Below, one piece after another: positions 1 to 64,000 of a stretch of 64,000 bases of DNA (positions within the stretch are counted from its first letter, which is position 1; each line of letters opens with the position of its first letter). The stretch lies in NCBI GenBank assembly GCA_965655095.1, contig OZ296649.1:94240001-94304000 (forward strand), written 5' to 3'. The position numbers were made by a program, and so were the translations under genes. The notes under the pieces are model-generated. The model did not search any database and was not told where the DNA came from. It worked only from the letters and a program-made list of their open reading frames with translations. Source of the DNA: Haplodiscus bocki. Lineage: Eukaryota.

Positions 1-3000
1 CTTGCGAAATTTTCATGACGTCATCTGATTGTTTTTTAACTGCCTTTGTCTACAACTCTAGGTAGAGTATCAGTGCAACTTTTCAAAACAACCAGACGCC
101 GGACAAGGAAACAATTTTTACCGGAAACATCTGACAAATATTAATCGTCAACATAGTTTACTTAGCTGAAACAATTGATATTTGGTAGTCTGCCCACTGG
201 TTTTGGAAAATTGAAGGCCCTTTTACTAGTCACTCACTGATCGATTGGACTTCCGTCAAGTTTGATTATTCTTCCGTTTTTGAGGTTTACCCTGTCGAAG
301 GTTCTCGGCTGCCGGAATTTTTCTCCGTCACGACTGGTTAAGGAAAATGACAAACACAGTTTTTTGAATGCAATTAGTAAGTTGTTTTTCAAATCGTGCT
401 TTCAGAATGGTCCGCTAACGCGCAGTTACACACGAAACAACAGAGTTTTGTCCAATTGGTAAATTCACAAACTTTTTCAGCATTCCCCGGCTAAGTTTTA
501 GCGATTTTTTTTCGCAGAATCTTGCAATCCTTGATTCTCCGGCGTTTTCGTTTTCCAAAACGACGCTTCAGAGCTTCAAAAGCACACAAAATTTGTTTTG
601 TTCAGGTAATGAGTTCACCCGCGGTTATTTGACGGAATTTGGTGTAAAACATTGATCTGTTCTCTTTCTTTACAAGGCGAAAAGCTTCCGCCGCTTCGTT
701 TTCTCCTCGAAAAAAACGTGGTAACGTGGAATGGATCGCGATTCGCGATTGCTTTAGCTTGGTAGTACCGTTAGCTTCTTGGCCTGCATCAGAATTTCTC
801 TGAGTTCCGAAACAGTTGCACAGTTGTTTTTGAAGCAAAATATTTGATTCATCTCTGTTATTAAGGACGGACTGTTGTCGGTTAAAGAAATTTCTAGTAA
901 TAGACTGATACTTTTTTTGCTTTCTTACTGTTTGCACTATTCCAAACAGCAATTTTCTAACCGGGGCAAAAAGTAAATCCCGAAGTGTTTCAAGCATAAA
1001 AGTTATTTTTTGGCCAGAAAAGTTTTGCTACGTTTCTTGGCGCCTATGTTGTTTTTTCATGAATTGAGCCGCAAGCAACTTTAGTTTCTCGAAGTTGTTT
1101 TGATCCACTATAGTGTGTTTTGAACATTTTGCTTTATGAGGCTTTGAGTGGGCCGAACCAAGTGATGGTAGCAAGGGAATAGCTGTTTTTCCAGAAGAGG
1201 TGGTTTTGCGTTGTTTTTTTGTTTCCTTGGAACTATCTGTTGACATCGTCAGAAATGTTTCTTTAACTGCCGATATCTACAAGCCTATGTTTCCGTTCAA
1301 TTTTTTCAGTTGCATAGGCCTCAAACAAACGAACAATTTTTACAGAAATATTCTGGGGAAAACTAATGGTCGACATGGTTTTCTCAGCTCAAACATTTAT
1401 ATATTTGGTAATCTACCCACTGGTTTCGGATAGTTAACCACCCTTTTACTAGTCACTCGTTGATCGATTGGACTTCCGTCAAGTTTCAGTGGTCCTCCGT
1501 TCTGGAGGTTGATCCTGCCGAAGGTTCTCGGCTGCAGGAAATTTTGTCCGAAACGCCTAGTGAAGGAAAATGACAAGGGTTGTTTTTTCAGATGGCAATC
1601 AGTGAGTTTTTTTCAGCTAGTGCTTCCTCAATGGTTCAGTAGAGGTCTCTTACCCACGAAACAACAGTAGTTTGTTCGATTGGTATTTTGGCAATCGTTG
1701 TTTTAGGAAACTCTTTTCGGAGAACATTGAAATCAATGATTTTCTGGGTCTTCAGTTTTGAAAATGACGCCTTAAAGCTCCAAAAGCACACATAAGCAGT
1801 TTTATTCAGCTTATGAGTTCACCCGTGGTTAGTTGAGGGAAGTTGCGTGAAATTTTCGATCATTTCTATTTCCTTAAAAGGCGAAAAATTTCCGCCGGTT
1901 AGATTTCAATCAGGAAAACACATTGTAACGTAGATCAGATCTCAATTGCTTTAGCTATCAATAGTACCCTTGCCTCTTTGGCCTGCATCAAAAATTCTGT
2001 GAGTTCCAAAATAGTTGCAGAGTTTTTATTGATGCAAAAAACTTTGGTTCATTTGTGTTGTTTAGGACGGACTGTTGTCGGATATACAAGTTTTAGTATT
2101 TAACTGATATTTCTCTGCTGCTCTTTACTCTTCTCCCTGTTGCAAATGGCAGCTTTTTCAGCGCTGGAACAAGTGAAACTCTATGTGTTTCCTGCTTTAA
2201 ACAGCTTTTTTTCCTCGAAGTTTTTATTGCACCTATGTTCTTTTGAGGAATAGAGCTGACGGAGCAAAGAGACAGTAGCGACTAAACTTCGTTTTCCTCC
2301 AGTAAAATGGGCTTGGAAGTTTTTGGCTTTCTGGGGCTTTGAGTAGGCGGAACGAAGTAATGGTAGCAACGGACTTGCATTATTGTCCAGAAAGTGTGTC
2401 TTTGCGTTTTGTTTTTTTTTAAATCATGTGATGACATCGTCAGCAATTTTGTTCAACTGCCTAAATCTATGAGCTTAGGAGGAGTATCAGTACAAATTTT
2501 CAATACACTTAGGTTTTAGACAAAGAAACAATTTTTGCTGGGAAGAACTGGCGAAAGTCAATGGTCAGCATGGAATTCTTAGCTGAAACCTTTTGAAAGT
2601 TGGTGATCTGCCCACTGCTTTATTAAACTTAGGCGCCCCTTTACTAGCCATTCATTGGTCGACGAGACTTCTGTCATGTCCAATTAGTTGTCAGGTTTTG
2701 CATTCGACTCTGCCGAAACTTTTCGGTTGCCGAAAGAATTTCAACATTAAGACTGGCGGGGGTTATTGACAATGATGTTTTTTATCTGATGGCATGTTGT
2801 ACATTTTTTTTCAACTCATGCTTTTTGAAAGGTTCAGTATAGCTGTCTAACGCATGAAACAACAAAACTTTGCACAATAGGTGTTTTGGCGACATTTTGA
2901 GCTTTCCTTGACTGATTTTTAAAGAATTTCTGTTCCCAGAACCTTGGAAACAATGATTTTCCGGTTTTTTCAATTTCAAAAGGACGCTTGAGTGCTTCAA

Positions 3001-6000
3001 AAGCGCAAAAAAAAATTTTTAATCAGCTCAACAATTCACTCTTGATTAGTTGAGGCGAGTTGTGGTGGAAAGTCGCTCTCTTCTCATTCATTGCAAGCCA
3101 AAAATTTCCGTCGCGTAGGTTTCAATCCAAAAAAAATTTCTGTAACTTAGGTTGGATCTCGATTAACTTAGCTAACACATGTACCATGGTTTTCTGGCCA
3201 GATCTCAAGTTCTGTGAGTTTCAAAGCAGTAGCAGAGTTTTCATTGAGGCAAAAATTTTTGATTCATCTGTGTTGTTTTGGACGGACTGTTGTCGGATGA
3301 AGAAAGTTTTAGTTACTAACTGATATTGTCTTTGCTTAATTTCATTCCTCTACTTCTTCCAAAAAGCAGTTTTGTAACAGATGGTACAGGCGAAGCTTTA
3401 AGGGTTTCCTGCAAGCAGGTGTTTTTTTTGTCTGGAGGACCTGTTCTGGGTTCCTCGGAACGCGGCAATGGTATCGACCGTGTTTATTTTTTCTTCCAGA
3501 CTGGGTGGTTTTGCGTCCTGTTCTGTTCTTTTTTGTTTTCTTGCGACATTTTCATGACGTCATCTGATTGTTTTTTAACTGCCTTTGTCTACAACCCTAG
3601 GTAGAGTATCAGTGCAACTTTTCAAAACAACCAGACGCCGGACAAGGAAACAATTTTTACCGGAAACATCTGACAAATAATAATCGTCAACATAGTTTAC
3701 TTAGCTGAAACAATTGATATTTGGTAAGCTGCCCACTGGTTTTGGAAAATTGAAGGCCCTTTTACTAGTCACTCACTGATCGATTGGACTTCCGTCAAGT
3801 TTGATTATTCTTCCGTTTTTGAGGTTTACCCTGTCGAAGGTTCTCGGCTGCCGGAATTTTTCTCCGTCACGACTGGTTAAGGAAAATGACAAACACAGTT
3901 TTTTGAATGCAATTAGTAAGTTGTTTTTCAAATCGTGCTTTCAGAATGGTCCGATAACGCGCAGTTACACACGAAACAACAGAATTTTGTCCAATTGGTA
4001 AATTCACAAACTTTTTCAGCATTCCCTGGCTAAGTTTTAGCGATTTCTTTTCGCAGAATCTTGCAATCCTTGATTCTCCGGCGTTTTCGTTTTCCAAAAC
4101 GACGCTTCAGAACTTCAAAAGCACACAAAATTTGTTTTGTTCAGGTAATGAGTTCACCCGCGGTTATTTGACGGAATTTGGTGTAAAACATTGATCTCTT
4201 CTCTTTCTTTACAAGGCGAAAAGCTTCCGCCGCTTCGTTTTCTCCTCGAAAAAAACGTGGTAACGTGGAATGGATCGCGATTCGCGATTGCTTTAGCTTG
4301 GTAGTACCGTTAGCTTCTTGGCCTGCATCAGAATTTCTCTGAGTTCCGAAACAGTTGCACAGTTGTTTTTGAAGCAAAATATTTGATTCATCTCTGTTAT
4401 TAAGGACGGACTGTTGTCGGTTAAAGAAATTTCTAGTAATAGACTGATACTTTTTTTGCTTTCTTACTGTTTGCACTATTCCAAATAGCAATTTTCTAAC
4501 CGGGGCAAAAAGTAAATCCCGATGTGTTTCAAGCATAAAAGTTATATTTTGGCCAGAAAAGTTTTGCTACGTTTCTTGGCGCCTATGTTGTTTTTTCATG
4601 AATTGAGCCGCAAGCAACTTTAGTTTCTCGAAGTTGTTTTGATCCACTATGGTGTGTTTTGAACATTTTGCTTTATGGGGCTTTGAGTGGGCCGAACCAA
4701 GTGATGGTAGCAAGGGAAATGCTGTTTTTCCAGAAGAGGTGGTTTTGCGTTGTTTTTTTGTTTCCTTGGAACTATCTGTTGACATCGTCAGAAATGTTTC
4801 TTTAACTGCCGATATCTACAAGCCTATGTTTCGGTTCAATTTTTTCAGTTGCATAGGCCTCAAACAAACGAACAATTTTTACAGAAATATTCTGGGGAAA
4901 ACTAATGGTCGACATGGTTTTCTCAGCTCAAACATTTATATATTTGGTAATCTACCCACTGGTTTCGGATAGTTAACCACCCTTTTACTAGTCACTCGTT
5001 GATCGATTGGACTTCCGTCAAGTTTCAGTGGTCCTCCGTTTTGGAGGTTGATCCTGCCGAAGGTTCTCGGCTGCAGGAAATTTTGTCCGAAACGCCTAGT
5101 GAAGGAAAATGACAAGGGTTGTTTTTTCAGATGGCAATCAGTGAGTTTTTTTCAGCTAGTGCTTCCTCAATGGTTCAGTAGAGGTCTCTTACCCACGAAA
5201 CAACAGTAGTTTGTCCGATTGGTATTTTGGCAATCGTAGTTTTAGGAAACTCTTTTCGGAGAACATTGAAATCAATGATTTTCTGGGTCTTCAGTTTTGA
5301 AAATGACGCCTTAAAGCTCCAAAAGCACACGGAAACGGTTTTATTCAGCTTATGAGTTCACCCGTGGTTAGTTGAGGGAAGTTGGGTGTAATTTTCGATC
5401 ATTTCTATTTCTTTAAAAGGCGAAAAATTTCCGCCGGTTAGATTTCAATCAGGAAAAGACATTGTAACGTAGATCAGATCTCAATTGCTTTAGCTATCAA
5501 TAGTACCCTTGCCTTTTTGGCCTGCATCAAAAATTCTGTGAGTTCCAAAATAGTTGCAGAGTTTTTATTGAAGCAAAAAACTTTGGTTCATTTGTGTTGT
5601 TTAGGACGGACTGTTGTCGGATATACAAGTTTTAGTATTTAACTGATATTTCTCTGCTGCTCTTTACTCTTCTCCTTGTTGCACATGGCAGCTTTTCAGC
5701 GCTGGAACAAGTGAAACTCTAAGTGTTTCATGCTTTAAACAGCTTTTTTCCTCGAAGTTTTTATTGCACCTATGTTCTTTTGAGGAATAGAGCTGACAGA
5801 GCAAAGAGACAGTAGCGACTAAACTTCGTTTTCCTCCAGTAAAATGGGCTTGGAAGTTTTTGGCTTTCTGGGGCTTTGAGTAGGCGGAACGAAGTAATGG
5901 TAGCAACGGACTTGCATTATTGTCCAGAAAGTGTGTCTTTGCGTTTTGTTTTTTTTTAAATCATGTGATGACATCGTCAGCAATTTTGTTCAACTGCCTA

Positions 6001-6200
6001 AATCTATGAGCTTAGGAGGAGTATCAGTACAAATTTTCAATACACTTAGGTTTTAGACAAAGAAACAATTTTTGCTGGGAATAACTGGCGAAAGTCAATG
6101 GTCAGCATCGAATTCTTAGCTGAAACCTTTTGAAAGTTGGTGATCTGCCCACTGCTTTCTTAAACTTAGGCGCCCCTTTACTAGCCATTCATTGGTCGAC
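1..6200 (+). repeat. 3,539-bp trimeric higher-order repeat (1223+1195+1121 bp), ~1.75 copies visible
   Basis: Position 1 (cttgcgaaattttcatgacg) recurs at 3540. Near-identical chance ORFs are offset by exactly 3,539 bp (262/3801, 602/4141, 1028/4567). The end coordinate is approximate. Confidence 0.9.
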
Positions 6201-9200
6201 GAGATTTCTGTCTTGTCCAATTAGTTGTCATGTTTTGCATTCGACTCTGCCGAAACTTTTCGGTTGCCGAAAGAATTTCGCCAAAAAGACTGGCGAGGGT
6301 TATTGACAATGATGTTTTTCATCTGATGGCATGTCGTACATTCTTTTGGTTTTTTTTTCAACTCGTGCTTTTTGAATGGTTTAGTATAGCTTTCTAACGC
6401 ATGAAACAACAACACTTTGCACAATAGGTGTTTTGGCGACATTTTGAGCTTCCCTTGACTGATTTTTGTAGAATTTCTGTTCCGAGAACCTTGGAAACCA
6501 TGATTCTCCGTTTTTTTTTCAATTTCAAAAGGACGCGTGAGTGCTTCAAAAGCGCAAAATGTTGTTTTATTCAGCTCAACATTTCACTCTTGATTAGTTG
6601 AGGCGAGTTGTGATGGAGAGTTGATCCCTTCTCATTCATTGCCAGGCGAAAAGCTCCGCCGGGTAGATTTCAATCCGCAAAAATTTCTGTAACGTAGATT
6701 GGATCTTGATTGACTTAGCTAACAAAATTACCATGGTTTTTTGGCCAGATCTCAAGTTCTGTGAGTTCCAAAGCCGTTGCAGAGTTTTCATTGAAGCCAA
6801 AAAATTTGATTTATCTACGTTGTTAAAGACAGACTGTTGTGGCCTAAGGAAAGTTTTAGTAAATTAGTAAATGACTGTTTTCTTCGCTTCTTTTTAGTCT
6901 TCGTACTGTTCCAAATAGCAAATTTCTAACCACAGAGACAAATGAAACTCTAAGTGTTTTCAGCAAAAAAAATTTTTATGGCTCGAAGAACTTTGCTGGG
7001 TTTCTCAACAACTATGTTATTTTTTGATGAGTTGTGCCGCCGGAGCAGAGAAACCGTAGCGTCTAATTTTCGTTTTGATCCACTATGGTGTCCATTGCAC
7101 TTTTTTCTCTCTGAGGCTTTGAGTGGGCGGAACGAAGTGATGGTAGCAATGGGAATGCTGTTTTTCCAGAATAGGTGGTTTTGCGTTGTTTTTTATTGTT
7201 TCTTTTCAACTATCTCCTGACATCGTCAGAACTGTTCCTTTAACTGCCAATATCTACAAACCTATGTTTTGGTTCAGTTTTTTCAGTCACATAGGCCTCA
7301 AACAAACGAACAATTTTTACAGAAATATTCTGGGGAAAACTAATGGTCGACATGGTTTTCTTAGCTCAAACATTTATATATTTGGTAATCTGCCCACTGG
7401 TTTTGGATAGTTAACCACCTTTTTACTAGTCACTCGTTGATCGATTGGACTTCCGTCAAGTTTCAGTGGTCCTCCGTTTTGGAGGTTGATCCTGCCGAAG
7501 GTTCTTGGCTGCAGGAAATTTTGTCCGAAACGCCTAGTGAAGGAAAATGACAAGGGTTGTCTTTTCAGATGGCAATCTGTGAAGTTTTTTCAGCTAGTGC
7601 TTCCTCAATGGTCCAGTAGAGGTCTCTTACCCACGAAACAACAGTAGTTTGTCCGATTGGTATTTTGGCATTCGTAGTTTTAGGAAACTCTTTTCGGAGA
7701 ACATTGAAATCAATGATTTTCTGGGTCTTCAGTTTTGAAAATGACGCCTTAAAGCTCCAAAAGCACACGGAAGCGGTTTTATTCAGCTTATGAGTTCACC
7801 CGTGGTTAGTTGAGGGAAGTTGGGTGTAATTTTCGATCATTTCTATTTCCTTAAAAAACGAAAAATTTCCGCCGGTTAGATTTCAATCAGGAAAAATCAT
7901 TGTAACGTAGATCAGATCTCAATTGCTTTAGCTATCAATAGTACCCTTGCCTTTTTGGCCTGCATCAAAAATTCTGTGAGTTCCAAAATAGTTGCAGAGT
8001 TTTTATTGAAGCAAAAAACTTTGGTTCATTTGTGTTGTTTAAGACAGACTGTTGTCGGATATACAAGTTTTAGTATTTAACTGATATTTCTCTGCTGCTC
8101 TTTACTCTTCTCCTTGTTGCACATGGCAGCTTTTTCAGCGCTGGAACAAGTGAAACTCTAAGTGTTTCCTGCTTTAAACAGCTTTTTTCCTCGAAGTTCT
8201 TATTGCACCTATGTTCTTTTGAGGAATAGAGCTGACGGATTAAAGAGACAGTAGCGACTAAACTTCGTTTTCCTCTAGTAAAATGGGCTTAGAAGTTTTT
8301 TGTTTCCTGGGCTCTGAGTAGACGGAGCGAAGTAATGGTAGCAACGACTTGCCTTTTGTCCAGAAAGTGTGGTTTTGCATTTTGTTTTTTTTGAAATCAT
8401 TTGGTGACATCGTGAGCAGTTTTGTTCAACTGCCTAAATCTATGAGCTTAGGAGGAGTATCAGTACAAATTTTCAATACACTTAGGTTTTAGACAAAGAA
8501 ACAATTTTTGCTGGGAAGAACTGGCGAAAGTCAATGGTCAGCATGGAATTCTTAGCTGAAACCTTTTGAAAGTTGGTGATCTGCCCACTGCTTTCTTAAA
8601 CTTAGGCGCCCCTTTACTAGCCATTCATTGGTCGACGAGATTTCTGTCTTGTCCAATTAGTTGTCAGGTTTTGCATTCGACTCTGCCGAAACTTTTCGGT
8701 TGCCGAAAGAATTTCGCCAAAAAGACTGGCGAGGGTTATTGACAATGATGTTTTTCATCTGATGGCATGTTGTACATTCTTTTGGTTTTTTTTCAACTCG
8801 TGCTTTTTGAATGGTTTAGTATAGCTGTCTAACGCATGAAACAACAACACTTTGCACAATAGGTGTTTTGGCGACATTTTGAGTTTTCCTTGACTGATTT
8901 TTGTAGAATTTCTGTTCCGAGAACCTTGGAAACCATGATTCTCCGTTTTTTTTCAATTTCAAAAGGACGCGTGAGTGCTTCAAAAGCGCAAAATGTTGTT
9001 TTATTCAGCTCAACAATTCACTCTTGATTAGTTGAGGCGAGTTGTGATGGAGAGTTGATCCCTTCTCGTTCATTGCCAGGCGAAAAGCTCCGCCGGGTAG
9101 ATTTCAATCCGCAAAAATTTCTGTAACGTAGATTGGATCTTGATTGACTTAGCTAACAAAATTACCATGGTCTTTTGGCCAGATCTCAAGTTCTGTGAGT

Positions 9201-12200
9201 TCCAAAGCCGTTGCAGAGTTTTCATTGAAGCCAAAAAATTTGATTTATCTACGTTGTTAAAGACAGACTGTTGTGGCCTAAGGAAAGTTTTAGTAAATTA
9301 GTAAATGACTGTTTTCTTCGCTTCTTTTTAGTCTTCGTACTGTTCCAAATAGCAAATTTCTAACCACAGAGACAAATGAAACTCTAAGTGTTTTCAGCAA
9401 AACAAACTTTTATGGCTCGAAGAACTTTGCTGGGTTTCTCAACAACTATGTTATTTTTTGATGAGTTGTGCCGCCGGAGCAAAGAGACCGTAGCGTCTAA
9501 TTTTCGTTTTGATCCACTATGGTGTCCTTTGCACTTTTTTCTTTCTGAGGCTTTGAGTGGGCGGAAGGAAGTGACGGTAGCAATGGGAATGCTGTTTTTC
9601 CAGAATAGGTGGTTTTGCGTTGTTTTTTATTGTTTCTTTTGAACTATCTCCTGACATCGTCAGAACTGTTTCCTTAACTGCCAATATCTACAAAGCTATG
9701 TTTTGGTTCAGTTTTTTCAGTCACATAGGCCTCAAACAAACGAACAATTTTTACAGAAATATTCTGGGGAAAAATAATGGTCGACATGGTTTTCTTAGCC
9801 CAAACATTTATATATTTGGTAATCTGCCCACTGGTTTTGGATAGTTAACCACCTTTTTACTAGTCACTCGTTGATCGATTGGACTTCCGTCAAGTTTCAG
9901 TGGTCCTCCGTTTTGGAGGTTGATCCTGCCGAAGGTTCTCGGCTGCAGGAAATTTTGTCCGAAACGCCTAGTGAAGGAAAATGACAAGGGTTGTTTTTTC
10001 AGATGGCAATCAGTGAGTTTTTTTCAGCTAGTGCTTCCTCAATGGTCCAGTAGAGGTCTCTTACCCACGAAACAACAGTAGTTTGTCCGATTGGTATTTT
10101 GGCAATCGTAGTTTTAGGAAACTCTTTTCGGAGAACATTGAAATCAATGATTTTCTGGGTCTTCAGTTTTGAAAATGACCCCTTAAAGCTCCAAAAGCAC
10201 ACGGAAGCGGTTTTATTCAGCTTATGAGTTCACCCGTGGTTAGTTGAGGGAAGTTGGGTGTAATTTTCGATCATTTCCTTTTCCTTAAAAGGCGAAAAAT
10301 TTCCGCCGGTTAGATTTCAATCAGGAAAAGACATTGTAACGTAGATCAGATCTCAATTGCTTTAGCTATGAATAGTACCCTTGCCTTTTTGGCCTGCATC
10401 AAAAATTCTGTGAGTTCCAAAATAGTTGCAGAGTTTTTATTGAAGCAAAAAACTTTGGTTCATTTGTGTTGTTGTTTAGGACAGACTGTTGTCGGATATA
10501 CAAGTTTTAGTATTTAACTGATATTTCTCTGCTGCTCTTTAGTCTTTTCCCTGTTGCAAATGGCAGCTTTTTCAGCGCTGGAACAAGTGAAACTCTATGT
10601 GTTTCCTGCTTTAAACAGCTTTTTTTCCTCGAAGTTTTTATTGCACCTATGTTCTTTTGAGGAATAGAGCCGACGGAGCAAAGAGACAGTAGCGACTAAA
10701 CTTCGTTTTCCTCCAGTAAAATGGGCTTAAAAGTTTTTTCTTTTCAGGGGCTTTGAGTAGACGGAGCGAAGTAATGGTAGCAACGGACTTGCCTTTTGTC
10801 CAGAAAGTGTGGTTTTGCATTTTGTTTTTATTTAAATCATTTGATGACATCGTGAGCAATTTCGTTTAACTGCCTAAATCTATGAGCCTAGGAGGAGTAT
10901 CAGTACAAATTTTCAATACACTTAGGTTTTAGACAAAGAAACAATTTTTGCTGGGAAGAACTGGCCAAAGTCAATGGTCAGCATGGAGTTCTTAGCTGAA
11001 ACCTTTTGAAAGTTGGTGATCTGCCCACTGCTTTCTTAAATATAGGCGCCCGTTTACTAGCCATTCATTGGTCGACGAGACTTCTGTCATGTCCAACCAG
11101 TTGTCAGTTTTTGCATTCGACTCTGCCGAAACTTTTTGGTTGTCGAAAGATTTTCGCCATTAAGACTGGCGGGGGTTATTGACAATGATGTTTTTTATCT
11201 GATGGCATGTCGTACATTTTTTTGTTTTTTTTCAACTCGTTCTTTTTGAATGGTTCAGTATAGCTGTCTAACGCATGAAACAACAAAACTTTGCACAATA
11301 GGTGTTTTGCCGACATTTTGAGCTTTCCTTGACTGATTTTTAAAGAATTCCTGTTCCGAGAAACTTGGAAACAATGATTTTCCTGTTTTTTTTCAAATTC
11401 AAAAGGACGCGTGGGTGCTTCAGAAGCGCAAAAAGGTTGTTTTATTCAGCTCAACAATTCACTCTTGATTAGTCGAGGCAACTTGTGATGGAAAGTTGAT
11501 CTCTTATCACTCTTTGCAAGGCGAAAATTTTCCACCGGAAAGATTTCAACCCGAAAAAAAATTCTGTAACGTAGATTGGATCTCGATTGACTTAGTTAAC
11601 AAAAATACCATGGTTTTTTTGGCCAGATCTCAAGTCTGTGAGCTCCAAAGCATTTGCAGAGTTTTCAATGATGCAAAAAATTTTGATTAAACTCTGTTGT
11701 TAAGGACAGACTGTTGTAGCCTAAGCAAAGTTCTAGTATATGACTGTTTTTTTCGCTTCTCTTTAGTCATCGTACTATTCTAAATAGCAAAGTTCTAACC
11801 AGAGATACAATTGAAACTCTAAGTGTTTTCAGCAAAACAAACTTTTATGGCTCGAAGAACTTTGCTGGGTTTCTCAACAACTATGTTATTTTTTGATGAG
11901 TTGTGCCACCGGAGCAAAGAAACCGTAGCGTCTAATTTTCGTTTTGATCCACTATGGTGTCCTTTGCACTTTTTTCTCTCTGAGGCTTTGAGTGGGCGGA
12001 AGGAAGTGACGGTAGCAATGGGAATGCTGTTTTTCCAGAATAGGTGGTTTTGCGTTGTTTTTTATTGTTTCTTTTGAACTATCTCCTGACATCGTCAGAG
12101 CTGTTTCCTTAACTGCCAATATCTACAAACCTATGTTTTGGTTCAGTTTTTTCAGTCACATAGGCCTCAAACAAACGAACAATTTTTACAGAAATATTCT

Positions 12201-54600: not shown

Positions 54601-57600
54601 GCAAAACTTGTATCTCGTTTGTTGCAGCGAATAACAAGACTCATAGAGTTGTCGCGGACATCATGGGCAGTGCGAGTTTCGAAACAGTTGCACAGACCGC
54701 GTTTACATGGGTAGCGAAGTTTGATTCAATCGGGTTTTTCTTAACTGAGGTGTTTTTGATAAAGGAAAAACTCAGTGAGTAACTGATAAACTTTTGGTTA
54801 GCTTCTCGCTTCCTATTACAAATGACAAGTATCTGACAGTGGTAAAAGTCTATAGAAAAAGTTGCGTCTGGAAATTGTTAAGTGTGTGTCTCTAAGCCAT
54901 TCGCTATGTAACTTGGCGCCCATGTTTTTTTTTGATTTTCTCCCCAGGTTTCGAACATTTTTCCAAGATATACCAAGGCGAAGATTTTTTGCCGGCTCAT
55001 TTTTCAAGATACTATTTTTGGAGCATAGCAGGTATATCAACCGTCATAACTAACAACAGGACCCATGGTTTTGTCGGGGGAATCACAGGCTGTGAGAGTT
55101 TCAAATCAGTTACAGAGCCTTTACATGTGTATAAAAAACCATTTGATTCCCCAGTGCTTTGTATCCTAGCATATTTTCGTTGAAGTAAAGTTTCAGCAAC
55201 TAAATGAACTTTTTGGTTTTCTTTTTTCTTTCTAATGCCAACGGCAGTTTTCTCACACTAGTGAACCTCTGGAACAGATAGTGGCGGAGAAACAAAAAAA
55301 GATTCATACCAATTTGTAATATGCCAAAAAAATTACTCGAGACTCGAAGAATGTCAGTGCTTTTTCGTTGCTCACCCAGGGAGAAGACAGAGGTTACTCG
55401 TCTGTCTGAACCAAAATCCGGAATTTTTTCGGCCCACCTTGTTTATTAGCCAATAACTTTCAAAATTGTGTACACATAAGAATATTATCGAGGACTTTGA
55501 ACACAGATGCATTTCTCCAAAAGTGTCTTTACCTTGCTGCACCAAAAAAGTGCTGTCTGGTATTCCACTTTCAACAATTTTTGACCTTACTTTTGTGTCG
55601 GTTTTTTCGGTCTATCACAAAAGGTCCAATATCTGATTCATGTTGTTCTGATTCCGCCATTTTTTCCACAACTCCCGGAAGTTTTCTTTGAACATCTATG
55701 TCTCACATCCTATTAGATAAAACCCTTCTAATAATTTCACAAGCAATTTGGCATGACTTCAGGGTTTTTTTCGATTCTAGAAACTGCGCCAAGAATTTTT
55801 TTTGGCGGAGGATTTTTTCCTATTATGTGACATGCGAATCAGGTACCTTCCAGGTATGTAAGTGCTTCCTCCATATAACAGCCTTGCCCAATTCGATTGA
55901 AAAATATTGTCTCATTTCTTCCCCAGTGGTATTTTATGCTTCGGTTGAATGGCCGGACATCTCGAAAAGGTGCTATTTTGGCTCAGAAACACTCTTTTTT
56001 TGTAACCCAAATGGAGCGCACATTGAAGCTTCAAAACAAGCAACAGTCCGTTCTGACTTTGCCTGAAAATCCTCTTGTGGTAGCAGTCCTAGAAAATGGA
56101 CTTCCTATTGAACAAGTCAATGGTTACTATTCTGGCAGAATTTTTGCGCTGGTCTGACAAACTTGTGTTTTTCAAAATTGAAAATTTTCGAATCAGGAAT
56201 TTTGCAAAACATGAAAAAAGGGTTCTCTTTTCTAGGTTGATTAGCATCCTATGCCAATTGGATGGATTCCAATTGAAAAAAAAAGAAATTGATACCGAGA
56301 AAACCGTCTGTACAAGGCTATGCGTGTAGCTTGAAGCCGTGCCCTAAGTGTCTTGACGCTTATATTTTATGATTTCCTTCTCTGATTTCGTCACAACTTC
56401 AGAAAAAATTTCCTTCTTATCCTTAGTTCTCCGAAACTAACGAGTGGTATGCGTACGGTTTTTTTGGACCTAGAGGCAAGAAAGAGATAATAACTTAGTA
56501 GAAAAAATTTTCCGGTTAAATTTGGCCAAGATGCTTTTTTCAGCCGAAACAGTGGGAAATATCGTAAACAGCCCACTGCTTTTATGAAACTTGACGACCC
56601 TTTACTGGCCAACATTGGTTCAACGCTCTTTCAACGTAAATTAGGAGGTCGCCAAAAAGTGTAGTTGACATTGCCGAAATTTTGATGCTGCAAGAACACT
56701 TGTGGCTTAAAGAAAACTGGCCGAAATTTTCAGAATCGATACTCTTTCAGAGTGCAAAATGTACTTTTTTATCAGTTTCCTGTCTCTGTACTATATGAGA
56801 GGTCTAATGAACTTTTCCACTCCTTGCCAAGTCAAAACAAAGATTAGGCGAAAGTTTTTGTTTTTCCGTTGAGTTTTAGTGATTTTTTCTCTGGAATTTT
56901 CATGAAATTCAAGACTATCCGAAAATTTAAATTTCAAAAACGACACTTCGGTGCCACCAAGGCAGTTTGAAGACGTCCTATTTAGACCAACATTACACCC
57001 ATGACTTCTACAAGTGCTTTACACTGCGAAATCAAACATATTCAAGTTTTGGAGTGAGCGAATTTTTCAACCATATCTATTTTCTTCCAGAAGACCAAAG
57101 AATTGAAGCAAAGCTTGTATCTCGTTTGTTGCAGCGAATAACAAGACTCATAGAGTTTTCGCGGACATCATGGGCAGTGCGAGTTTCGAAACAGTTGCAC
57201 AGAACGCGTTTACATGGGTAGCGAATTTTGATTCAATCGGGTTTTTCTTAACTGAGGTGTTTTTGATAAAGAAAAACTCAGTGAGTAACTGATAAACTTT
57301 TGGTTAGCTTCTAGCTTCCTATTACAAATGACAAGTATCTGACAGTGGTAAAAGTCTATAGAAAAAGTTGCGTCTGGAAATTGTTAAGTGTGTGTCTCTA
57401 AGCCATTCGCTATGTAACTTGGTGCCCATGTTTTTTTTTGATTTTCTTCCCAGGTTTCGAACATTTTTCCAAGATATACCAAGGCGGAGATTTTTTGCCG
57501 CCTCATTTTTCAAGAAACAATTTTTGGAGCTTAGCAGGTATATCAACGGTCATAGCTAACAGCAGAACTCATGGTTTTGTTGCGGGAATCACAGGCTGTG

Positions 57601-60600
57601 AGAGTTTCAAATCTGTTACACAGCCTTTACATGTGTATAAAAAAACCTTTGATTCCCCAGTGCTTTGTTTCCTAGCATCTTTTCGTTGAAGGAAAGTTTC
57701 AGTAACTAAGTGAGTTTTTTGGCATTCTTTTTCTCTTTCTAGTGCTAATGGAATTTTTCTCACGCTAGTGAACCTCTGGAGCAATTAGTGGCGGAGAAAC
57801 AAAAAAGATTCATACCATTTTGTAATATGCCAAAAAAATTACTCGAGACTCGAAGAATGTCAGTGCTTTTTCGTTGCTCACCCAGGGAGAAGACAGAGGT
57901 TACTCGTCTGTCTGAACCAAAATCCGGAATTTTTTCGGCCCACCTTGTTTATTAGCCAATAACTTTCAAAATTGTGTACACATAAGAATATTATCGAGGA
58001 CTTTGAACACAGATGCATTTCTCCAAAAGTGTCTTTACCTTGCTGCACCAAAAAAGTGCTGTTTGGTATCCCACTTTGACCATTTTTTGACCTTATTTTT
58101 GTGTCGGTTTTTTCGGTCTATCACAAAAGGTCCAATATCTGATTCATGTTGTTCTGATTCCGCCATTTTTTCCACAACTCCCGGAAGTTTTCTTTGAACA
58201 TCTATGTCTCACATCCTATTAGATAAAACCCTTCTAATAATTTCACAAGCAATTTGGCATGACTTCAGGGTTTTTTTCGATTCTAGAAACTGCGCCAAGA
58301 ATTTTTTTTGGCGGAGGATTTTTTCCTATTATGTGACATGCGAATCAGGTACCTTCCAGGTATGTAAGTGCTTCCTCCATATAACAGCCTTGCCCAATTC
58401 GATTGAAAAATATTGTCTCATTTCTTCCCCAGTGGTATTTTATGCTTCGGTTGAATGGCCGGACATCTCGAAAAGGTGCTATTTTGGCTCAGAAACACTC
58501 TTTTTTTGTAACCCAAATGGAGCGCACATTGAAGCTTCAAAACAAGCAACAGTCCGTTCTGACTTTGCCTGAAAATCCTCTTGTGGTAGCAGTCCTAGAA
58601 AATGGACTTCCTATTGAACAAGTCAATGGTTACTATTCTGGCAGAATTTTTGCGCTGGTCTGACAAACTTGTGTTTTTCAAAATTGAAAATTTTCGAATC
58701 AGGAATTTTGCAAAACATGAAAAAAGGGTTCTCTTTTCTAGGTTGATTAGCATCCTATGCCAATTGGAAGGATTCCAATTGAAAAAAAAAGAAATTGATA
58801 CCGAGAAAACCGTCTGTACAAGGCTATGCGTGTAGCTTGAAGCCGTGCCCTAAGTGTCTTGACGCTTATATTTTATGATTTCCTTCTCTGATTTCGTCAC
58901 AACTTCAGAAAAAATTTCCTTCTTATCCTTAGTTCTCCGAAACTAACGAGTGGTATGCGTACGGTTTTTTTGGACCTAGAGGCAAGAAAGAGATAATAAC
59001 TTAGTAGAAAAAATTTTCCGGTTAAATTTGGCCAAGATGCTTTTTTCAGCCGAAACAGTGGGAAATATCGTAAACAGCCCACTGCTTTTATGAAACTTGA
59101 CGACCCTTTACTGGCCAACATTGGTTCAACGCTCTTTCAACGTAAATTAGGAGGTCGCCAAAAAGTGTAGTTGACATTGCCGAAATTTTGATGCTGCAAG
59201 AACACTTGTGGCTTAAAGAAAACTGGCCGAAATTTTCAGAATCGATACTCTTTCAGAGTGCAAAATGTACTTTTTTATCAGTTTCCTGTCTCTGTACTAT
59301 ATGAGAGGTCTAATGAACTTTTCCACTCCTTGCCAAGTCAAAACAAAGATTAGGCGAAAGTTTTTGTTTTTCCGTTGAGTTTTAGTGATTTTTTCTCTGG
59401 AATTTTCATGAAATTCAAGACTATCCGAAAATTTAAATTTCAAAAACGACACTTCGGTGCCACCAAGGCAGTTTGAAGACGTCCTATTTAGACCAACATT
59501 ACACCCATGACTTCTACAAGTGCTTTACACTGCGAAATCAAACATATTCAAGTTTTGGAGTGAGCGAATTTTTCAACCATATCTATTTTCTTCCAGAAGA
59601 CCAAAGAATTGAAGCAAAGCTTGTATCTCGTTTGTTGCAGCGAATAACAAGACTCATAGAGTTTTCGCGGACATCATGGGCAGTGCGAGTTTCGAAACAG
59701 TTGCACAGAACGCGTTTACATGGGTAGCGAATTTTGATTCAATCGGGTTTTTCTTAACTGAGGTGTTTTTGATAAAGAAAAACTCAGTGAGTAACTGATA
59801 AACTTTTGGTTAGCTTCTCGCTTCCTATTACAAATGACAAGTATCTGACAGTGGTAAAAGTCTATAGAAAAAGTTGCGTCTGGAAATTGTTAAGTGTGTG
59901 TCTCTAAGCCATTCGCTATGTAACTTGGTGCCCATGTTTTTTTTTGATTTTCTTCCCAGGTTTCGAACATTTTTCCAAGATATACCAAGGCGGAGATTTT
60001 TTGCCGCCTCATTTTTCAAGAAACAATTTTTGGAGCTTAGCAGGTATATCAACGGTCATAGCTAACAGCAGAACTCATGGTTTTGTTGCGGGAATCACAG
60101 GCTGTGAGAGTTTCAAATCTGTTACACAGCCTTTACATGTGTATAAAAAAACCTTTGATTCCCCAGTGCTTTGTTTCCTAGCATCTTTTCGTTGAAGGAA
60201 AGTTTCAGTAACTAAGTGAGTTTTTTGGCATTCTTTTTCTCTTTCTACTGCTAATGGGATTTTTCTCACGCTAGTGAACCTCTGGAACAATTAGCGGCGG
60301 AGAAACAAAAAAGACTCATACCATTTTGTAATATGCCAAAAAATTTACTCGAGACTGGGAGAATGTCAGTGCTTTTTCGTTGCTCACCTAGGGAGAGGAC
60401 AGGGGTTACTCGTCTGTCTGAACCAAAATCCGGAATTTTTTCGGCCCACCTTGTTTATTAGACATTAACTTTCGAAATTGTGTACACTTAAGAATATTAT
60501 CGAGGCCTTTGAACTCAGATGCACTTCTCCAAAAGTGTCTTTAGCCTGCTGTACCGAAATATTGCTGTTTGGTATCCCACTCTCACCATTTTTTGACCTT

Positions 60601-63600
60601 ATTTTTGTGTCGGTTTTTTTCGGTCTATCAAAAAAGGTCCAATGTCTTATTCATGTTGTTCTGATTCCGCCATTTTTTCCACAACTCCCGGAAGTTTTCT
60701 TTGAACATCTATGTCTCACATCCTATTAGATAAAACCCTTCTAATAATTTCACAAGCAATTTGGCATGACTTCAGGCTATTTTTCGATTCTAGAAACTGC
60801 GCCAAGAATTTTTTTTGGTGGAGGATTTTTCTTTTCCTATTACGTGACATGCGAATCAGGTACCTTCCAGGTATGTAAGTGCTTCCTCCATATAACAGCC
60901 TTGCCCAATTTGATTGAAAAATGTTGTCTCATTTCTTCCCCAGTGGTATTTTATGCTTCGGTTGAATGGCCGGACACCTCGAAAAGGTGCTATTTTGGCT
61001 CAAAAACACTCTTTTTTTTGCAACCCCAATGGAGCGCACAGTGAAGTTTCAAAACAAGCAACAGTCCGTTCTGATTTTGCCTGAAAAGCCTCTTGTGGTA
61101 GCAGTTCTAGAAAACAGACTTCCTACTGAACAAGCCAATGGTTAATATTCTGGCAGAAATTTTGAGCTGGTCTTATAAACTTGTGTTTTCTGAAAATTAA
61201 AAATTTTCGAATCAGGAATTTTGCAAAACTTGAAAAAAGTGTGCTCTTTTCTAGGTCGATTGGCATCCTATGCCAATTGGCAGGATTCCAATTTCAAAAA
61301 GAAAGAAATTGATACTGAGAAAACCGTCTGTACAAGGCTATGCGTGTAGCTTGAAAACGTGCCCTAAGTGTCTTGACGCTTATATTTTATGATTTCCTTC
61401 GCTGATTTCGTCACAACTTCAGAAAACTATTTCCTTCATATCCCTAGTTCTCCGAAACTAACGAGTGGTATGCGTATAGTTTTTTGGACCTAGGGGCAGG
61501 AAAAGGATAATAACTTAGTTGAAAAATTTTTCCGGTTAAATTTGGCCAACATGCTTTTTTCAGCCGAAACAGTTGGAAATATCGTAAACAGCCCACTGCT
61601 TTTATGAAACTTGACGACTTTTTACTAGCCACCATTAGTTCAACGGTCTTTCAACGTAAATTAGGAGGTCGCCAAAAAGTGTAGTTGACATTGCCGAAAT
61701 TTTGATGCTGCAAGAACACTTGTGGCTTAAAGAAAACTGGCCGAAGTTTTCAGAATCGACACACTTTCAGAGTGCAAAATGGACTTTTTTATCAGTTTTC
61801 TGTCTCTTTACTATATGAGAGGTCTAATGAGCCTTTCTAATCCTTGCCAAGTCAAAACTTAGATCAAGCGAAAGGTTTTGCCTTTCCGTTGAGTTTTAGT
61901 GATTTTTTCTCTGGAATTTTCATGAATTCCAAGACTATCCGAAATTATAAGTTTCAAAAAACGAAACTTAGGGGACATGAAGGCAGTTTGAAGACGTCCT
62001 ATTTAGACCAACTTTACACCCATGACTTCTAGAAGGGCTTTACACTGCGAAATTAAACCTTTTCAGTTTCTGAAGTGAGCGAATTTTTAAACCATATCTA
62101 TTTTCTTCCAGAAAACCAAAGAAATGAAGCAGAGCTTGTATCTCGTTTGTTGCAGCGAATAACAAGGTTCATGGAGTTTTCGCGTACATCACGAGCAGTG
62201 TGAGTTTTGAAACAGTTGCACAGACCGCGTTTTGCATGGGTAGCGATCTTTGATTCAATCGGGTTATTTTAACTGGGATGTTTTCGATAAAGGAAAAATT
62301 CAGTGAGTAACTGATGAACTTCTGGTTAGTTGTTCGCTTCCTATTAAAAATGACAAGTATCTGACGGTGGTAAAAGTCCATAGAAAAAGTTGTGTCTGGA
62401 AACTGTTAAGTGTTTGTCTCTGAGCCATTCGCTATGTCTCTTGGTGGCGATGTTTTCTTTTTGATTTTCTTCCCAGGTTTCGAACATTTTTCCAAGATAT
62501 ACCAAGGCGGAGAATTTTTGCCAGCTCATTTTTCAAGAAACAATTTTTGGAGCATAGCAGGTATATCAACCGTCATAGCTAACATCAGGACTCATGGTTT
62601 TGTCGCGGGAATCACAGGCTGTGGGAGTTTCAAATCAGTTACAGAGCCTTTACATGTGTTTAAAAAACCATTTGATTCCCCAGTGCTTTGTTTCCTAGCA
62701 TGTTTTCGTTGAAGTAAAGTTTCAGTAACTAAATGAGTTTTTTGGCATTCTTTTTCTCTTTCTACTGTTAATGGCAGTTTTCTCACGCTAGTAAACCTCT
62801 GGAACAATTAGTGGCGGAGAAACAAAGATTCATACCAATTTGTAATATGCCAAAAAATTTACTCGAGACTGGGAGAATGTCAGTGCTTTTTCTTTGCTCA
62901 CCTAGGGAGAAGACAGGGGTTACTCGTCTGTCTGAACAAAAATCCGGAATTTTTTTGGCCCACCTTGTTTATTAGCCATTAACTTTCGAAATCGTGTACA
63001 CTTAAGAATATTATCGAGGCCTTTGAACTCAGATGCACTTCTCCAAAAGTGTCTTTAGCCTGCTGTACCGAAATATTGCTGTTTGGTATCCCACTTTCAC
63101 CATTTTTTGACCTTATTTTTGTGTCGGTTTTTTTCGGTCTATCACAAAAGGTCCAATGTCTGATTCATGTTGTTCTGATTCCGCCATTTTTTCCACAACT
63201 CCCGGAAGTTTTCTTTGAACATCTATGTCTCACATCCTATTAGATAAAGCCCTTCTAATAATTTCACAAGCAATTTGGCATGACTTCAGGTTTTTTTTCG
63301 ATTCTAGAAACTGAGCCAAGGATTTTTTTTGGCGGAGGATTTTTCTTTTCCTATTACGTGACATGCGAATCAGGTACCTTCCAGGTATGTAAGTGCTTCA
63401 TCCATATAACAGCCTTGCCCAATTTGATTGAAAAATGTTGTCTCATTTCTTCCCCAGTGGTATTTTATGCTTCGGTTGAATGGCCGGACACCTCGAAAAG
63501 GTGCTATTTTGGCTCAAAAACACTCTTTTTTTGTAACCCCAATGAAGCGCACATTGAAGCTTCAAAACAAGCAACAGTCCGTTCTGATTTTGCCTGAAAA

Positions 63601-64000
63601 GCCTCTTGTGGTAGCAGTTCTAGAAAATAGACTTCCTACTGAACAAGTCAATCGTTAATATTCTGGCAGAAATTTTGCGCTGGTCTTATAAACTTGTGTT
63701 TTTTGAAAATTGAAAATTTTCGAATCAGGAATTTTGCAAAACTTGAAAAAAGTGTGCTCTTTTCTAGGTTGATTGGCATCCTATGCCAATTGGCAGGATT
63801 CCAATTTCAAAAGAAAAGAAATTGATACTGAGAAAACCGTCTGTACAAGGCTATGCGTGTAGCTTGAAGCCGTGCCCTAAGTGTCTTGACGCTTATATTT
63901 TATGATTTCCTTCGCTGATTTCGTCACAACTTCAGAAAAATATTTCCTTCTTATCCCTAGTTCTCCGAAACTAACGAGTGGTATGCGTACAGTTTTTTGG
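48619..64000 (+). repeat. Right homogenised macrosatellite array, ~6.1 composite units of 2,505-2,514 bp
   Basis: The anchor CAGCC(C/A)ACTG lies at 49052, 51557, 54064, 56569, 59075 and 61589. Identical chance ORFs occur at 49868/52373, 50815/53320, 55698/58204, 56391/58897, 56967/59473 and 57438/59944. The array runs off the right edge. Confidence 0.97.

What the first reader, a model, noticed from the sequence alone, without database searches (positions are those of the whole stretch)
1..64000. Layered kilobase-monomer satellite: two independently homogenised HOR arrays flanking an old monomeric core
Seen: one family fills the window in one orientation. It runs young trimer, young dimer, mosaics, ~25 kb of diverged monomers, then a different young 2.5-kb array. 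Established: homogeneous HOR arrays bordered by diverged monomeric layers is the architecture of primate alpha satellite, whose monomer is only 171 bp. Inference: this may be an undescribed (peri)centromeric or heterochromatic macrosatellite with ~1.2-kb monomers, caught between two expansions. I do not recognise the family.
Basis: partly seen in the sequence, partly recalled or inferred. Interest (0 to 1): 0.7.

Follow-up and report, generated by a model that had tools for sequence, protein, structure and literature searches.

The report
Tandem array of whole rolling-circle transposons
The window is part of a 135-kb one-way row of complete copies of a small non-coding rolling-circle transposon, re-copied in blocks of different ages. 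It is a transposon-born satellite of a known kind, and nothing tested here points to a centromere.

Summary
One repeat family, all on the + strand, covers 94.5% of the window. The order is as described: a 3.54-kb trimer, a 2.44-kb dimer, an 85-92% mosaic, about 24 kb of monomers no more than 70-75% alike, then a 2,506-bp array.

The interpretation needs changing. Each "monomer" is a whole non-coding transposon of the Helentron/HINE type. It has a T-run at each end, a 10-11-nt subterminal inverted repeat and an 8-bp 3' hairpin. Units are joined end to start with nothing between them. About 500 copies of its 3' end lie on both strands of all chromosomes.

The array is about 135 kb (C2:94.199-94.334 Mb) and holds at least five separately homogenised blocks. 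A hAT element and a 17-kb element with inverted ends have inserted into it. It shows no coding signal, no Rfam match and no hidden short period.

No array of the window's own subfamilies (about 80% alike or more) turned up at another locus. Looser same-strand clusters of the wider family do occur on other chromosomes.

Most likely a head-to-tail transposon chain was enlarged by repeated local block duplication. A centromere role is untested and has no support here. Tandem Helitron concatemers are already published. This scan had already reported head-to-tail rolling-circle arrays and HINE families elsewhere in this genome.

The parts
1..6930 (+). Young 3,539-bp higher-order unit of three monomer types (X, Y, Z). 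It continues upstream of the window to about -4.8 kb.
   Evidence: Self-alignment of 1-3378 with 3540-6930 is 95.6% identical; tiles reach 97-99%. Monomers within a unit are 69-73% alike. The three types form three separate clades.
4768..14510 (+). Young higher-order unit of about 2,435 bp (Y+Z, the trimer without X), about four copies. The first copy is shared with the last trimer unit.
   Evidence: Tile offsets of 2,434-2,440 and 4,870 at 95-99%. Its Y and Z monomers group with the trimer's Y and Z monomers.
14511..24164 (+). Mosaic zone of intermediate age: X-, Y- and Z-like monomers in irregular order.
   Evidence: Best identity is 85-92%, with offsets of 3,715, 4,950 and 7,400. Its monomers branch at the base of the young X/Y/Z clades.
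24165..46144 (+). Old layer: single elements of 1.06-2.05 kb, at most 70-75% alike. One 4.8-kb duplicate (about 36-39 kb and 41-44 kb) is 84-88% alike. The switch from left-type to right-type elements lies at about 33 kb.
   Evidence: End branches are 0.25-0.44. 5' modules are present up to 33,090 and absent beyond. GC and AT skew change at 30-34 kb.
26652..26911 (+). Example of a seamless joint. The 3' end of one element (subterminal repeat, hairpin, T-run) stops at 26,721. It is followed at once by 5' end modules (T-run, then subterminal repeat).
   Evidence: End profiles match at 26652-26721 (3'), 26723-26780 and 26786-26911 (5'). The joint sequence is printed.
42365..42437 (+). 3' end of an old element whose hairpin still has all 8 base pairs.
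   Evidence: 8 of 8 Watson-Crick pairs.
46145..47882 (-). hAT transposon inserted into the old layer. It is not part of the repeat family.
   Evidence: The 518-aa ORF matches DUF659 and the hAT dimerisation domain. Inverted ends and an 8-bp target duplication with 7 of 8 bases matching are read. Contigs of sample S1 bridge both joints with 0 differences.
47883..48618 (+). Last old stretch before the young array. It is alike to positions 1800-2506 of the 2,506-bp unit.
   Evidence: nhmmer hit at 47875-48578, E 3.8e-99.
48619..64000 (+). Young 2,506-bp higher-order unit made of two different elements, both lacking the 5' module (3' ends 1,064 and 1,441 bp apart). There are 6.1 copies in the window. 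It runs on to +64.8 kb, then as a 2,300-bp deletion form to +79.8 kb.
   Evidence: Neighbouring units are 94.6% alike over 12.9 kb, and some pairs 99-100%. Two kinds of 3' end alternate. The continuation is shown.

Best explanation
The window is the middle of a roughly 135-kb, one-orientation tandem array. Its repeat unit is a complete, non-coding rolling-circle transposon of about 1.1-1.6 kb, of the Helentron/HINE type.

Shown:
- Each unit starts with the element's 5' end (a T-run, two bases, then a 10-11-nt subterminal repeat).
- Each unit stops at the element's 3' end (the inverse of that repeat, an 8-bp hairpin, then a short T-rich tail).
- The next unit follows with nothing in between.
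- The same element, with the same ends, lies dispersed in hundreds of old copies on both strands of all chromosomes.
- Blocks of two or three neighbouring units were later copied as blocks, at several places and times. This gives higher-order repeats 82-100% alike next to old units no more than 70-75% alike.

Inferred:
- The chain was founded either by a rolling-circle event that did not stop at the 3' end, or by elements landing in the T-run at the end of a resident copy.
- All later growth came from unequal exchange or replication slippage between units, not from transposition.
- The array has no sequence-encoded product and is most likely neutral repeat DNA.
For: Ends of dispersed copies:
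- Thirteen copies lose likeness to each other within a few bases of the same 3' point. Seven to nine do so at the same 5' point, with unrelated flanks.
- The 5' repeat is the inverse complement of the 3' subterminal repeat in all seven copies checked.
- The hairpin is paired in 81-85% of cells against 39-46% in slid controls, and four pairs change on both sides. It folds with z = -2.3.
- This layout fits the published definition of HINEs (PMC4067079).

Abundance: the 33-nt 3' motif occurs 90 times at up to 3 mismatches (control 0). A degenerate form occurs 497 times, 252 forward and 245 reverse (control 7).

Joints and layout in the array:
- Joints are seamless, with the 3' end directly followed by the 5' end.
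- The tree is clustered by position, and block identities are layered.
- Structural types are segregated: every unit left of 33 kb has 5' modules and none to the right does. This argues for local copying.

No product: no Pfam family in 12 array or element ORFs, no period-3 signal (p = 0.50), no Rfam or tRNA match.

Published precedent: rolling-circle replication yielding tandem Helitron copies (10.1101/2021.06.02.446622; Xiong et al. 2016 as cited in PMC11934779).
Against: - No autonomous Rep/helicase partner with these ends was found, so the class rests on end structure alone. None of the listed Helitron_like_N sites lies near a listed 3' motif.
- No empty sites were examined. Insertion between T and T without a target duplication is therefore read from only three copies by eye.
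- Hairpin covariation does not exceed shuffles.
- The founding step is not resolved. Old array units and dispersed copies form a near-star tree, and one clade for all array units is borderline rejected (p-AU 0.045, with the group named after the tree was seen).
- The wider family forms other same-strand clusters that I could not fetch.
- Function was not tested: no RNA run holds the stretch and there are no chromatin data.
Confidence: 0.8

Rival explanations
1. The array is a working (peri)centromeric or heterochromatin-organising satellite. Its layers would record successive centromere expansions, as in primate alpha satellite.
For: - Young higher-order blocks lie beside old monomeric stretches in one orientation.
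- There are only two foreign insertions in 135 kb.
- Centromeric arrays of tandem Helitrons are reported in plants (Xiong et al. 2016 as cited in PMC11934779), so a transposon origin does not exclude this reading.
Against: - The close subfamilies occur at one 135-kb locus only.
- Copies elsewhere are single or in short clusters on both strands.
- There is no nucleosome-sized sub-period.
- CpG is not depleted: observed/expected 0.77-0.97, like the flanks.
- According to earlier, unchecked notes of this scan, the genome holds many unrelated arrays of similar build.
- No chromatin data are available.
Confidence: 0.08
2. The chain was built mainly by serial insertion. Each new element landed in the T-run at the end of a resident copy, which forces the same orientation. 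Local duplication added only the youngest blocks.
For: - Joints are seamless.
- Dispersed loci often hold two or more head-to-tail copies that are very unlike each other: L003, L042, L043 and same-strand pairs.
- There are several same-strand clusters on other chromosomes.
- The tree of old units and dispersed copies is near-star shaped, and one clade for the array is borderline rejected.
- Earlier notes of this scan propose such targeting for other Helitron-like families here. These are leads only.
Against: - None of the 13 dispersed copies nests inside the array clades.
- Structural types are strictly segregated by position rather than mixed: 5' modules everywhere left of 33 kb, nowhere to the right.
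- The two 3'-end kinds alternate regularly on the right.
- No filled or empty joint pair was seen.
Confidence: 0.1
3. The units are a tandem family of genes or small RNA genes, intact or decayed.
For: Kilobase units in one orientation and a strand-asymmetric base composition. Earlier notes of this scan report arrays of tRNA, 7SL and U14 genes elsewhere in this genome.
Against: - ORFs of 80 aa or more lie on both strands and do not stack at one place in the unit.
- No Pfam family was found.
- There is no period-3 pattern, and conservation along the unit is flat at 0.68-0.77.
- There is no Rfam or tRNA match.
Confidence: 0.01
4. The array is an assembly artefact, either collapsed or falsely expanded repeats.
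For: Blocks that are 99-100% alike are hard to assemble.
Against: - Most of the locus is diverged enough to be unique.
- Short-read contigs from sample S1 match the old layer and bridge both hAT joints with 0 differences; those of the second sample S2 lie on the same stretch but reach too few letters past the joints to count as bridging.
- Block boundaries are orderly.
Confidence: 0.01

Closest known systems
HINEs / DINE-1: non-autonomous Helentron elements (Thomas et al. 2014, PMC4067079)
   Same: Non-coding. A subterminal inverted repeat lies a few bases from the 5' end and about 40 nt from the 3' end, and is itself partly palindromic. A short stem-loop lies 9 nt from the 3' end. There are T-runs at both boundaries, no visible target duplication, and internal repeats of variable number (here the ~93-bp 5' module, 1-6 copies).
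   Different: No autonomous Helentron with the same ends was identified here. In the published cases an internal short repeat becomes the satellite. Here the whole element is the repeat unit.
Tandem Helitron concatemers (Drosophila pseudoobscura Y, 10.1101/2021.06.02.446622; centromeric Helitrons of plants, Xiong et al. 2016 as cited in PMC11934779)
   Same: Whole rolling-circle elements lie joined head to tail in long arrays, which those papers attribute to rolling-circle replication.
   Different: Those arrays are of canonical Helitrons and are mostly young. This one is of the T-T (HEL2/Helentron-like) end type. It is old, and it has been reworked into higher-order blocks of several ages.
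Local amplification of Helitron-like repeats in cnidarians (Hydractinia and Nematostella subtelomeres, PMC11934779)
   Same: Helitron derivatives are amplified locally into large blocks. Earlier notes of this scan call this genome a probable coral; I did not test that.
   Different: Those blocks are subtelomeric, occur on many chromosome arms and take up several per cent of the genome. This one is a single interstitial 135-kb locus at 62% of the chromosome.
Primate alpha satellite (higher-order arrays flanked by monomeric layers)
   Same: The layout is alike: units much more alike than the monomers inside them, age layers along the array, one orientation.
   Different: The monomer is 1.1-1.6 kb with no ~171-bp sub-period. 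It is a transposon with recognisable ends. The array is at one locus only, with no evidence of kinetochore chromatin.
Satellites seeded by tandem transposon dimers (McGurk and Barbash, 10.1101/158386)
   Same: A head-to-tail pair of transposons gives the substrate for unequal exchange, which then grows an array.
   Different: That model rests on double insertion of mostly cut-and-paste or retro-elements in Drosophila. Here the ends offer a built-in route, either read-through or landing in the terminal T-run.

Membership tests
HINE / Helentron-type non-autonomous rolling-circle element (as defined in PMC4067079) | Subterminal inverted repeats about 2-4 nt from the 5' end and about 38-60 nt from the 3' end | tested here: met
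   The 10-11-nt repeat starts 2 nt after the 5' T-run. Its inverse complement starts 41 nt before the 3' end. This holds in all seven copies compared.
HINE / Helentron-type non-autonomous rolling-circle element (as defined in PMC4067079) | Short palindrome (stem-loop) 8-35 nt from the 3' end | tested here: met
   An 8-bp stem with a 3-nt loop ends 9 nt before the terminus. It is paired in 81% of cells against 39-46% in slid controls, and four pairs change on both sides. It folds at -12.9 kcal/mol, z = -2.3. Covariation does not exceed shuffles.
HINE / Helentron-type non-autonomous rolling-circle element (as defined in PMC4067079) | Runs of T at both boundaries, and insertion into T-rich sites | tested here: inconclusive
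   T-runs at both ends are seen in dispersed copies and at array joints. Target preference needs empty sites, which I could not fetch.
HINE / Helentron-type non-autonomous rolling-circle element (as defined in PMC4067079) | No target-site duplication | tested here: inconclusive
   The flanks of three single copies (L036, L039, L048) show no direct repeat when read by eye. No empty site was compared.
HINE / Helentron-type non-autonomous rolling-circle element (as defined in PMC4067079) | No coding capacity | tested here: met
   No Pfam family in array or element ORFs. No period-3 signal.
HINE / Helentron-type non-autonomous rolling-circle element (as defined in PMC4067079) | An autonomous partner (Rep/helicase, often with an endonuclease) that shares the ends | tested here: inconclusive
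   The genome has 147 Helitron_like_N matches. None of the listed ones lies near a listed 3' motif. Only 100 of the 497 motif sites were listed, and no further DNA could be fetched.
Canonical Helitron (HEL1) | 5' TC and 3' CTRR ends with insertion between A and T | tested here: not met
   The ends are T-runs. The CTAA seen near the 3' end is the first arm of the hairpin, about 20 nt from the terminus, not the terminus itself.
Satellite DNA with higher-order repeats | Head-to-tail units in one orientation, with multi-monomer blocks far more alike than the monomers inside them | tested here: met
   All hits are on the + strand. Monomers are 69-76% alike and units 91-100% alike.
Centromeric satellite (alpha-satellite-like) | Association with CENP-A/CENH3 chromatin | not testable with these tools
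   No chromatin data. No RNA run holds the stretch either.
Centromeric satellite (alpha-satellite-like) | Large arrays of the family at the centromeres of most chromosomes | tested here: not met
   Close relatives are confined to C2:94.199-94.334 Mb. Elsewhere there are single copies and a few loose same-strand clusters. The search scores only the best candidates, so this is a lower bound.
Centromeric satellite (alpha-satellite-like) | Nucleosome-sized monomer or sub-period | tested here: not met
   No lag from 21 to 800 stands out (highest z 3.2-3.9 among 780 lags). TRF finds nothing but one 5-bp run.
Tandem gene or RNA-gene array | A conserved reading frame or RNA structure at a fixed place in the unit | tested here: not met

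The most novel reading that the evidence does not exclude
This HINE family builds one-way chains by itself. The T-run at the end of a resident copy would be the preferred landing site of the next copy, and it forces the same orientation. The C2 array would be the largest such chain, possibly the master locus that seeded the dispersed copies. Other same-strand clusters lie at C3:41.30-41.36 Mb, C4:67.97-68.04 Mb, C11:62.68-62.72 Mb and on C525. That would make self-end targeting a general route from rolling-circle transposon to satellite in this animal.
Probability: 0.15. Interest if true: 0.55.

Novelty: new member of a known kind. Interest (0 to 1): 0.3.

Why it matters
It removes a candidate centromere repeat from the list and names the family's origin. 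It is also a very clean record of how a rolling-circle transposon turns into satellite DNA. Whole elements with readable ends are still joined seamlessly, and at least five block amplifications of different ages lie side by side in one 135-kb locus. Two later transposon insertions mark points in that history. If long reads from other individuals or species show which layers vary, the locus could be used to time the steps from transposon chain to higher-order satellite in a cnidarian. Little is known about satellites and centromeres in that group.

Tried and rejected
- Tandem Repeats Finder was blind to the array because its longest period is 500. Self-BLAST and nhmmer were used instead.
- Rfam at gathering thresholds and ARAGORN found nothing.
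- The gene-array idea was rejected. ORFs are scattered on both strands. There was no Pfam hit in 12 array or element ORFs. There was no period-3 signal.
- A cryptic short monomer, as earlier notes report for other kilobase repeats of this genome, was rejected. The only internal repeat is the ~93-bp 5' module.
- I first read CTAA as a canonical Helitron 3' end. I dropped this when the alignment showed it to be one arm of the hairpin, with about 20 more conserved bases after it.
- I first placed the unit boundary at position 236 of the 2,506-bp unit. I corrected this when dispersed copies proved to extend about 95 nt further 5'.
- The search for the autonomous partner led nowhere.
- The comparison of hairpin integrity between array and dispersed copies was not informative. 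Array copies keep mostly 3-6 of 8 pairs; dispersed copies average 5.9.
- CpG observed/expected does not set the array apart from its flanks.
- No RNA run was found.
- The 17-kb insert has no likeness to the Polinton downstream or to any other fetched locus.
- The large protein searches were not used, because no claim here rests on a protein.
Full report
WHERE IT LIES. The window is G000:C2:94,240,001-94,304,000 of a 1.5-Gb eukaryote assembly. Earlier notes of this scan call the organism a probable reef coral; I did not test that. The window holds no N. GC is 37-41% throughout. GC skew and AT skew change at about 30-34 kb.

THE OBSERVATION. Tandem Repeats Finder sees nothing because its longest period is 500. 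BLAST of the first 1.3 kb finds a copy every 1.1-1.3 kb up to 25 kb, at 69-81% identity, all on the + strand. The more sensitive nhmmer search finds the family through the whole window, again only on the + strand. That search used the first monomer and the 2,506-bp unit of the right-hand array as queries. Together they cover 94.5% of the window. The one large hole is a hAT transposon at 46,145-47,882. The small holes are diverged family sequence, and some of them match dispersed copies.

The best non-self identity of 400-bp tiles gives the age map:
- 1-6.9 kb: period 3,539, 96-99% alike.
- 4.8-14.5 kb: period about 2,435, 95-99%.
- 14.5-24.2 kb: mixed offsets, 85-92%.
- 24.2-48.6 kb: at most 70-75%, apart from one 4.8-kb duplicate at 84-88%.
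- 48.6-64 kb: period 2,506, 91-100%.

THE WHOLE LOCUS. I fetched 50 kb on each side. The array runs from window coordinate -41.1 kb to +93.9 kb, about 135 kb, all on the + strand. Its layers are:
- -41 to -36 kb: old.
- -36 to -22 kb: young blocks of 3.6-3.9 kb and 1.47 kb, 96-100% alike.
- -22.0 to -5.0 kb: a 17-kb foreign insertion.
- -4.8 to +14.5 kb: the trimer and the dimer.
- 14.5-24.2 kb: the mosaic.
- 24.2-48.6 kb: the old layer.
- 48.6-64.8 kb: the 2,506-bp block.
- 64.8-79.8 kb: a 2,300-bp deletion form, 99-100% alike.
- 79.8-90 kb: a form of about 3.0 kb, 82-86% alike.
- 90-94 kb: an old end.

The picture is a patchwork of at least five separately homogenised blocks and three old stretches. 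It is not two arrays around one core.

WHAT THE MONOMER IS. Searches of the whole genome with the units found weak, short matches (66-80% identity) on every large chromosome and on both strands. I fetched about 25 of these places. The copies have defined ends:
- Thirteen copies stay alike up to the same 3' point and are unrelated beyond it.
- Seven to nine copies start being alike at the same 5' point.
- The 3' end reads, in order: an 11-nt partly palindromic repeat, two bases, an 8-bp stem with a 3-nt loop, then nine bases ending in a T-run (consensus).
- The 5' end is a T-run, two bases, then the inverse complement of that 11-nt repeat.
- The hairpin is paired in 81-85% of cells against 39-46% when the partner is slid. 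Four pairs change on both sides, though this does not exceed column shuffles. One copy folds at -12.9 kcal/mol, z = -2.3.

This is the build that Thomas and co-workers give for HINEs, the non-autonomous partners of Helentrons. They describe subterminal inverted repeats 2-4 nt from the 5' end and 38-60 nt from the 3' end. They also describe a palindrome 8-35 nt from the 3' end, T-runs at the boundaries and no target duplication (PMC4067079). It is not the TC...CTRR build of canonical Helitrons.

The 33-nt 3' motif occurs 90 times in the genome at up to three mismatches, against 0 for the reversed control. A degenerate version occurs 497 times, 252 forward and 245 reverse, against 7 for the control. 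The family is therefore a dispersed transposon of at least several hundred copies.

HOW THE UNITS ARE JOINED. Profiles of the two ends placed on the 164 kb show a regular series. Left of 33 kb, every unit ends with a 3' end that is directly followed by one to six copies of the ~93-bp 5' module. Right of 33 kb, the 5' module is absent and two kinds of 3' end alternate about 1.07 and 1.43-1.6 kb apart. The printed joints show the 3' terminus abutting the 5' terminus with only the shared T-run between them, in old and young units alike. So the 'monomer' is one whole element. The 2,506-bp unit is a pair of two different elements, both lacking the 5' module.

NO PRODUCT.
- ORFs of 80 aa or more lie on both strands and do not stack at one place in the unit.
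- Twelve array or element ORFs have no Pfam family.
- Column conservation along the unit is flat (0.68-0.77) and has no period-3 component (p = 0.50).
- Rfam and tRNA searches are blank.
- There is no hidden short period. Earlier notes report ~175-bp sub-monomers in other kilobase repeats of this genome, but that does not apply here.

TREE AGAINST POSITION. I built a tree of a 555-column region shared by 70 array units and 13 dispersed copies.
- It clusters by position: 24 label changes, shuffled mean 58.7, reached in 0 of 200.
- The trimer's three monomer types are three clades. The dimer is the trimer's Y and Z types without X.
- The mosaic units branch at the base of these clades.
- All units from -41 to +32 kb fall in one large group, and all from 33 to 93 kb in another. 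This matches the structural switch and the change in base skew.
- Old units have end branches of 0.25-0.44. These are as long as or longer than those of dispersed copies (0.12-0.39), which sit at the base of both groups on very short, weakly supported inner branches.
- One clade for all array units is borderline rejected (p-AU 0.045). I named that group after seeing the tree, so this is weak.

MECHANISM. The young blocks are plainly copies of multi-unit blocks, as unequal exchange produces.

The old layers are also better explained by copying in place than by serial insertion. Structural types are strictly sorted by position, and no sampled dispersed copy nests among the array units.

How the first chain arose is open. 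Rolling-circle replication that fails to stop at the 3' end is the published explanation for tandem Helitrons (Xiong et al. 2016 as cited). The alternative is that an element landed in the terminal T-run of a resident copy. That would also force one orientation. Several observations keep this alternative alive:
- Several dispersed loci hold two head-to-tail copies that are very unlike each other (L003, L042, L043).
- At least seven same-strand pairs of 3' motifs lie within 5 kb of each other among 90 sites in 1.5 Gb. Chance would give about 0.03 such pairs (my estimate).
- Other same-strand clusters exist at C3:41.30-41.36 Mb, C4:67.97-68.04 Mb, C11:62.68-62.72 Mb and on contig C525.

CENTROMERE IDEA. 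Nothing here supports it.
- The close subfamilies occur at this one locus, at 62% of a 151.7-Mb chromosome.
- There is no nucleosome-sized period.
- CpG observed/expected (0.77-0.97) is like that of the flanks.
- According to earlier, unchecked notes of this scan, the genome is full of unrelated arrays of similar layout.

It is not excluded either. Centromeric tandem Helitrons are reported in plants, and no chromatin data were available. No RNA run holds the stretch.

ASSEMBLY CHECK. Short-read contigs of sample S1 bridge both hAT joints without a difference; contigs of the second sample, S2, lie on the same stretch but do not reach 31 letters past the joints, so they do not count as bridging. 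S1 may be the sample the assembly came from, so this is weak independent support.

COMPARISON AND VERDICT.
- It works like the published tandem Helitron concatemers.
- It works like the satellites seeded by transposon dimers (10.1101/158386, listed).
- It adds to reports of local Helitron amplification in cnidarians (PMC11934779).
- It differs from the classic HINE-to-satellite cases of oysters and Drosophila (reviewed in PMC10048060). There an internal short repeat expands. Here the whole element is the unit.

I file it as a new member of a known kind. Earlier follow-ups of this scan had already reported head-to-tail arrays of other Helitron-like families and abundant HINE families in this genome. 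This report adds one more family and a clear case of higher-order layering.

Noticed in passing
window 46145-47882 (- strand): A compact hAT transposon of 1,738 bp with an open 518-aa transposase frame (DUF659 plus the hAT dimerisation domain). It has inverted ends and an 8-bp target duplication with 7 of 8 bases matching. It is inserted in the old layer. Contig depth inside it is several times that of the flanks, so it is multi-copy.
   Followed up: partly
L011:7963 to L013:4970 (window coordinates -22037 to -5030; C2:94,217,963-94,234,970): A 17,008-bp element with inverted ends of about 590 bp (85-91% alike) and a likely 6-bp target duplication. It is inserted inside one array unit at about position 790 of the monomer. 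The only Pfam trace is a sub-threshold match to protein-primed DNA polymerase B (E 0.0075), plus a weak C2H2 finger. It is probably a decayed Polinton/Maverick-like element. It has no likeness to the Polinton downstream.
   Followed up: partly
L018:2316-8754 (C2:94,346,316-94,352,754), about 12 kb beyond the right end of the array: A Polinton/Maverick with an open 1,226-aa protein-primed polymerase B frame and a 416-aa double-jelly-roll capsid frame.
   Followed up: no
C3:41.30-41.36 Mb, C4:67.97-68.04 Mb, C11:62.68-62.72 Mb, contig C525:20-30 kb (coordinates): Other clusters of the same transposon family, each with all copies on one strand. In the C3 cluster two units 2,552 bp apart are 82% alike.
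   Followed up: no
L010-L011, window coordinates -35312 to -34737 (and the same place in the next two 3.6-3.9-kb units): The ~93-bp 5' terminal module of the element, which carries the 5' subterminal repeat, stands six times in a row. Units in the window carry one or two.
   Followed up: partly
window about 30000-34000: GC skew turns from positive to negative and AT skew halves. This is the same place where the units switch from the left type (with 5' modules) to the right type (without them).
   Followed up: partly
genome-wide, for example C3:133.75-134.31 Mb, C9:18.6-19.0 Mb, C1:134.8-135.0 Mb, C23: There are 147 Helitron_like_N matches. Many lie in open frames of 1,600-2,780 aa spaced about 15-17 kb apart on one strand. 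These are arrays of giant Helitron-like elements. They are probably the ones earlier notes of this scan describe, and they do not share the ends of the family studied here as far as the listed sites show.
   Followed up: no
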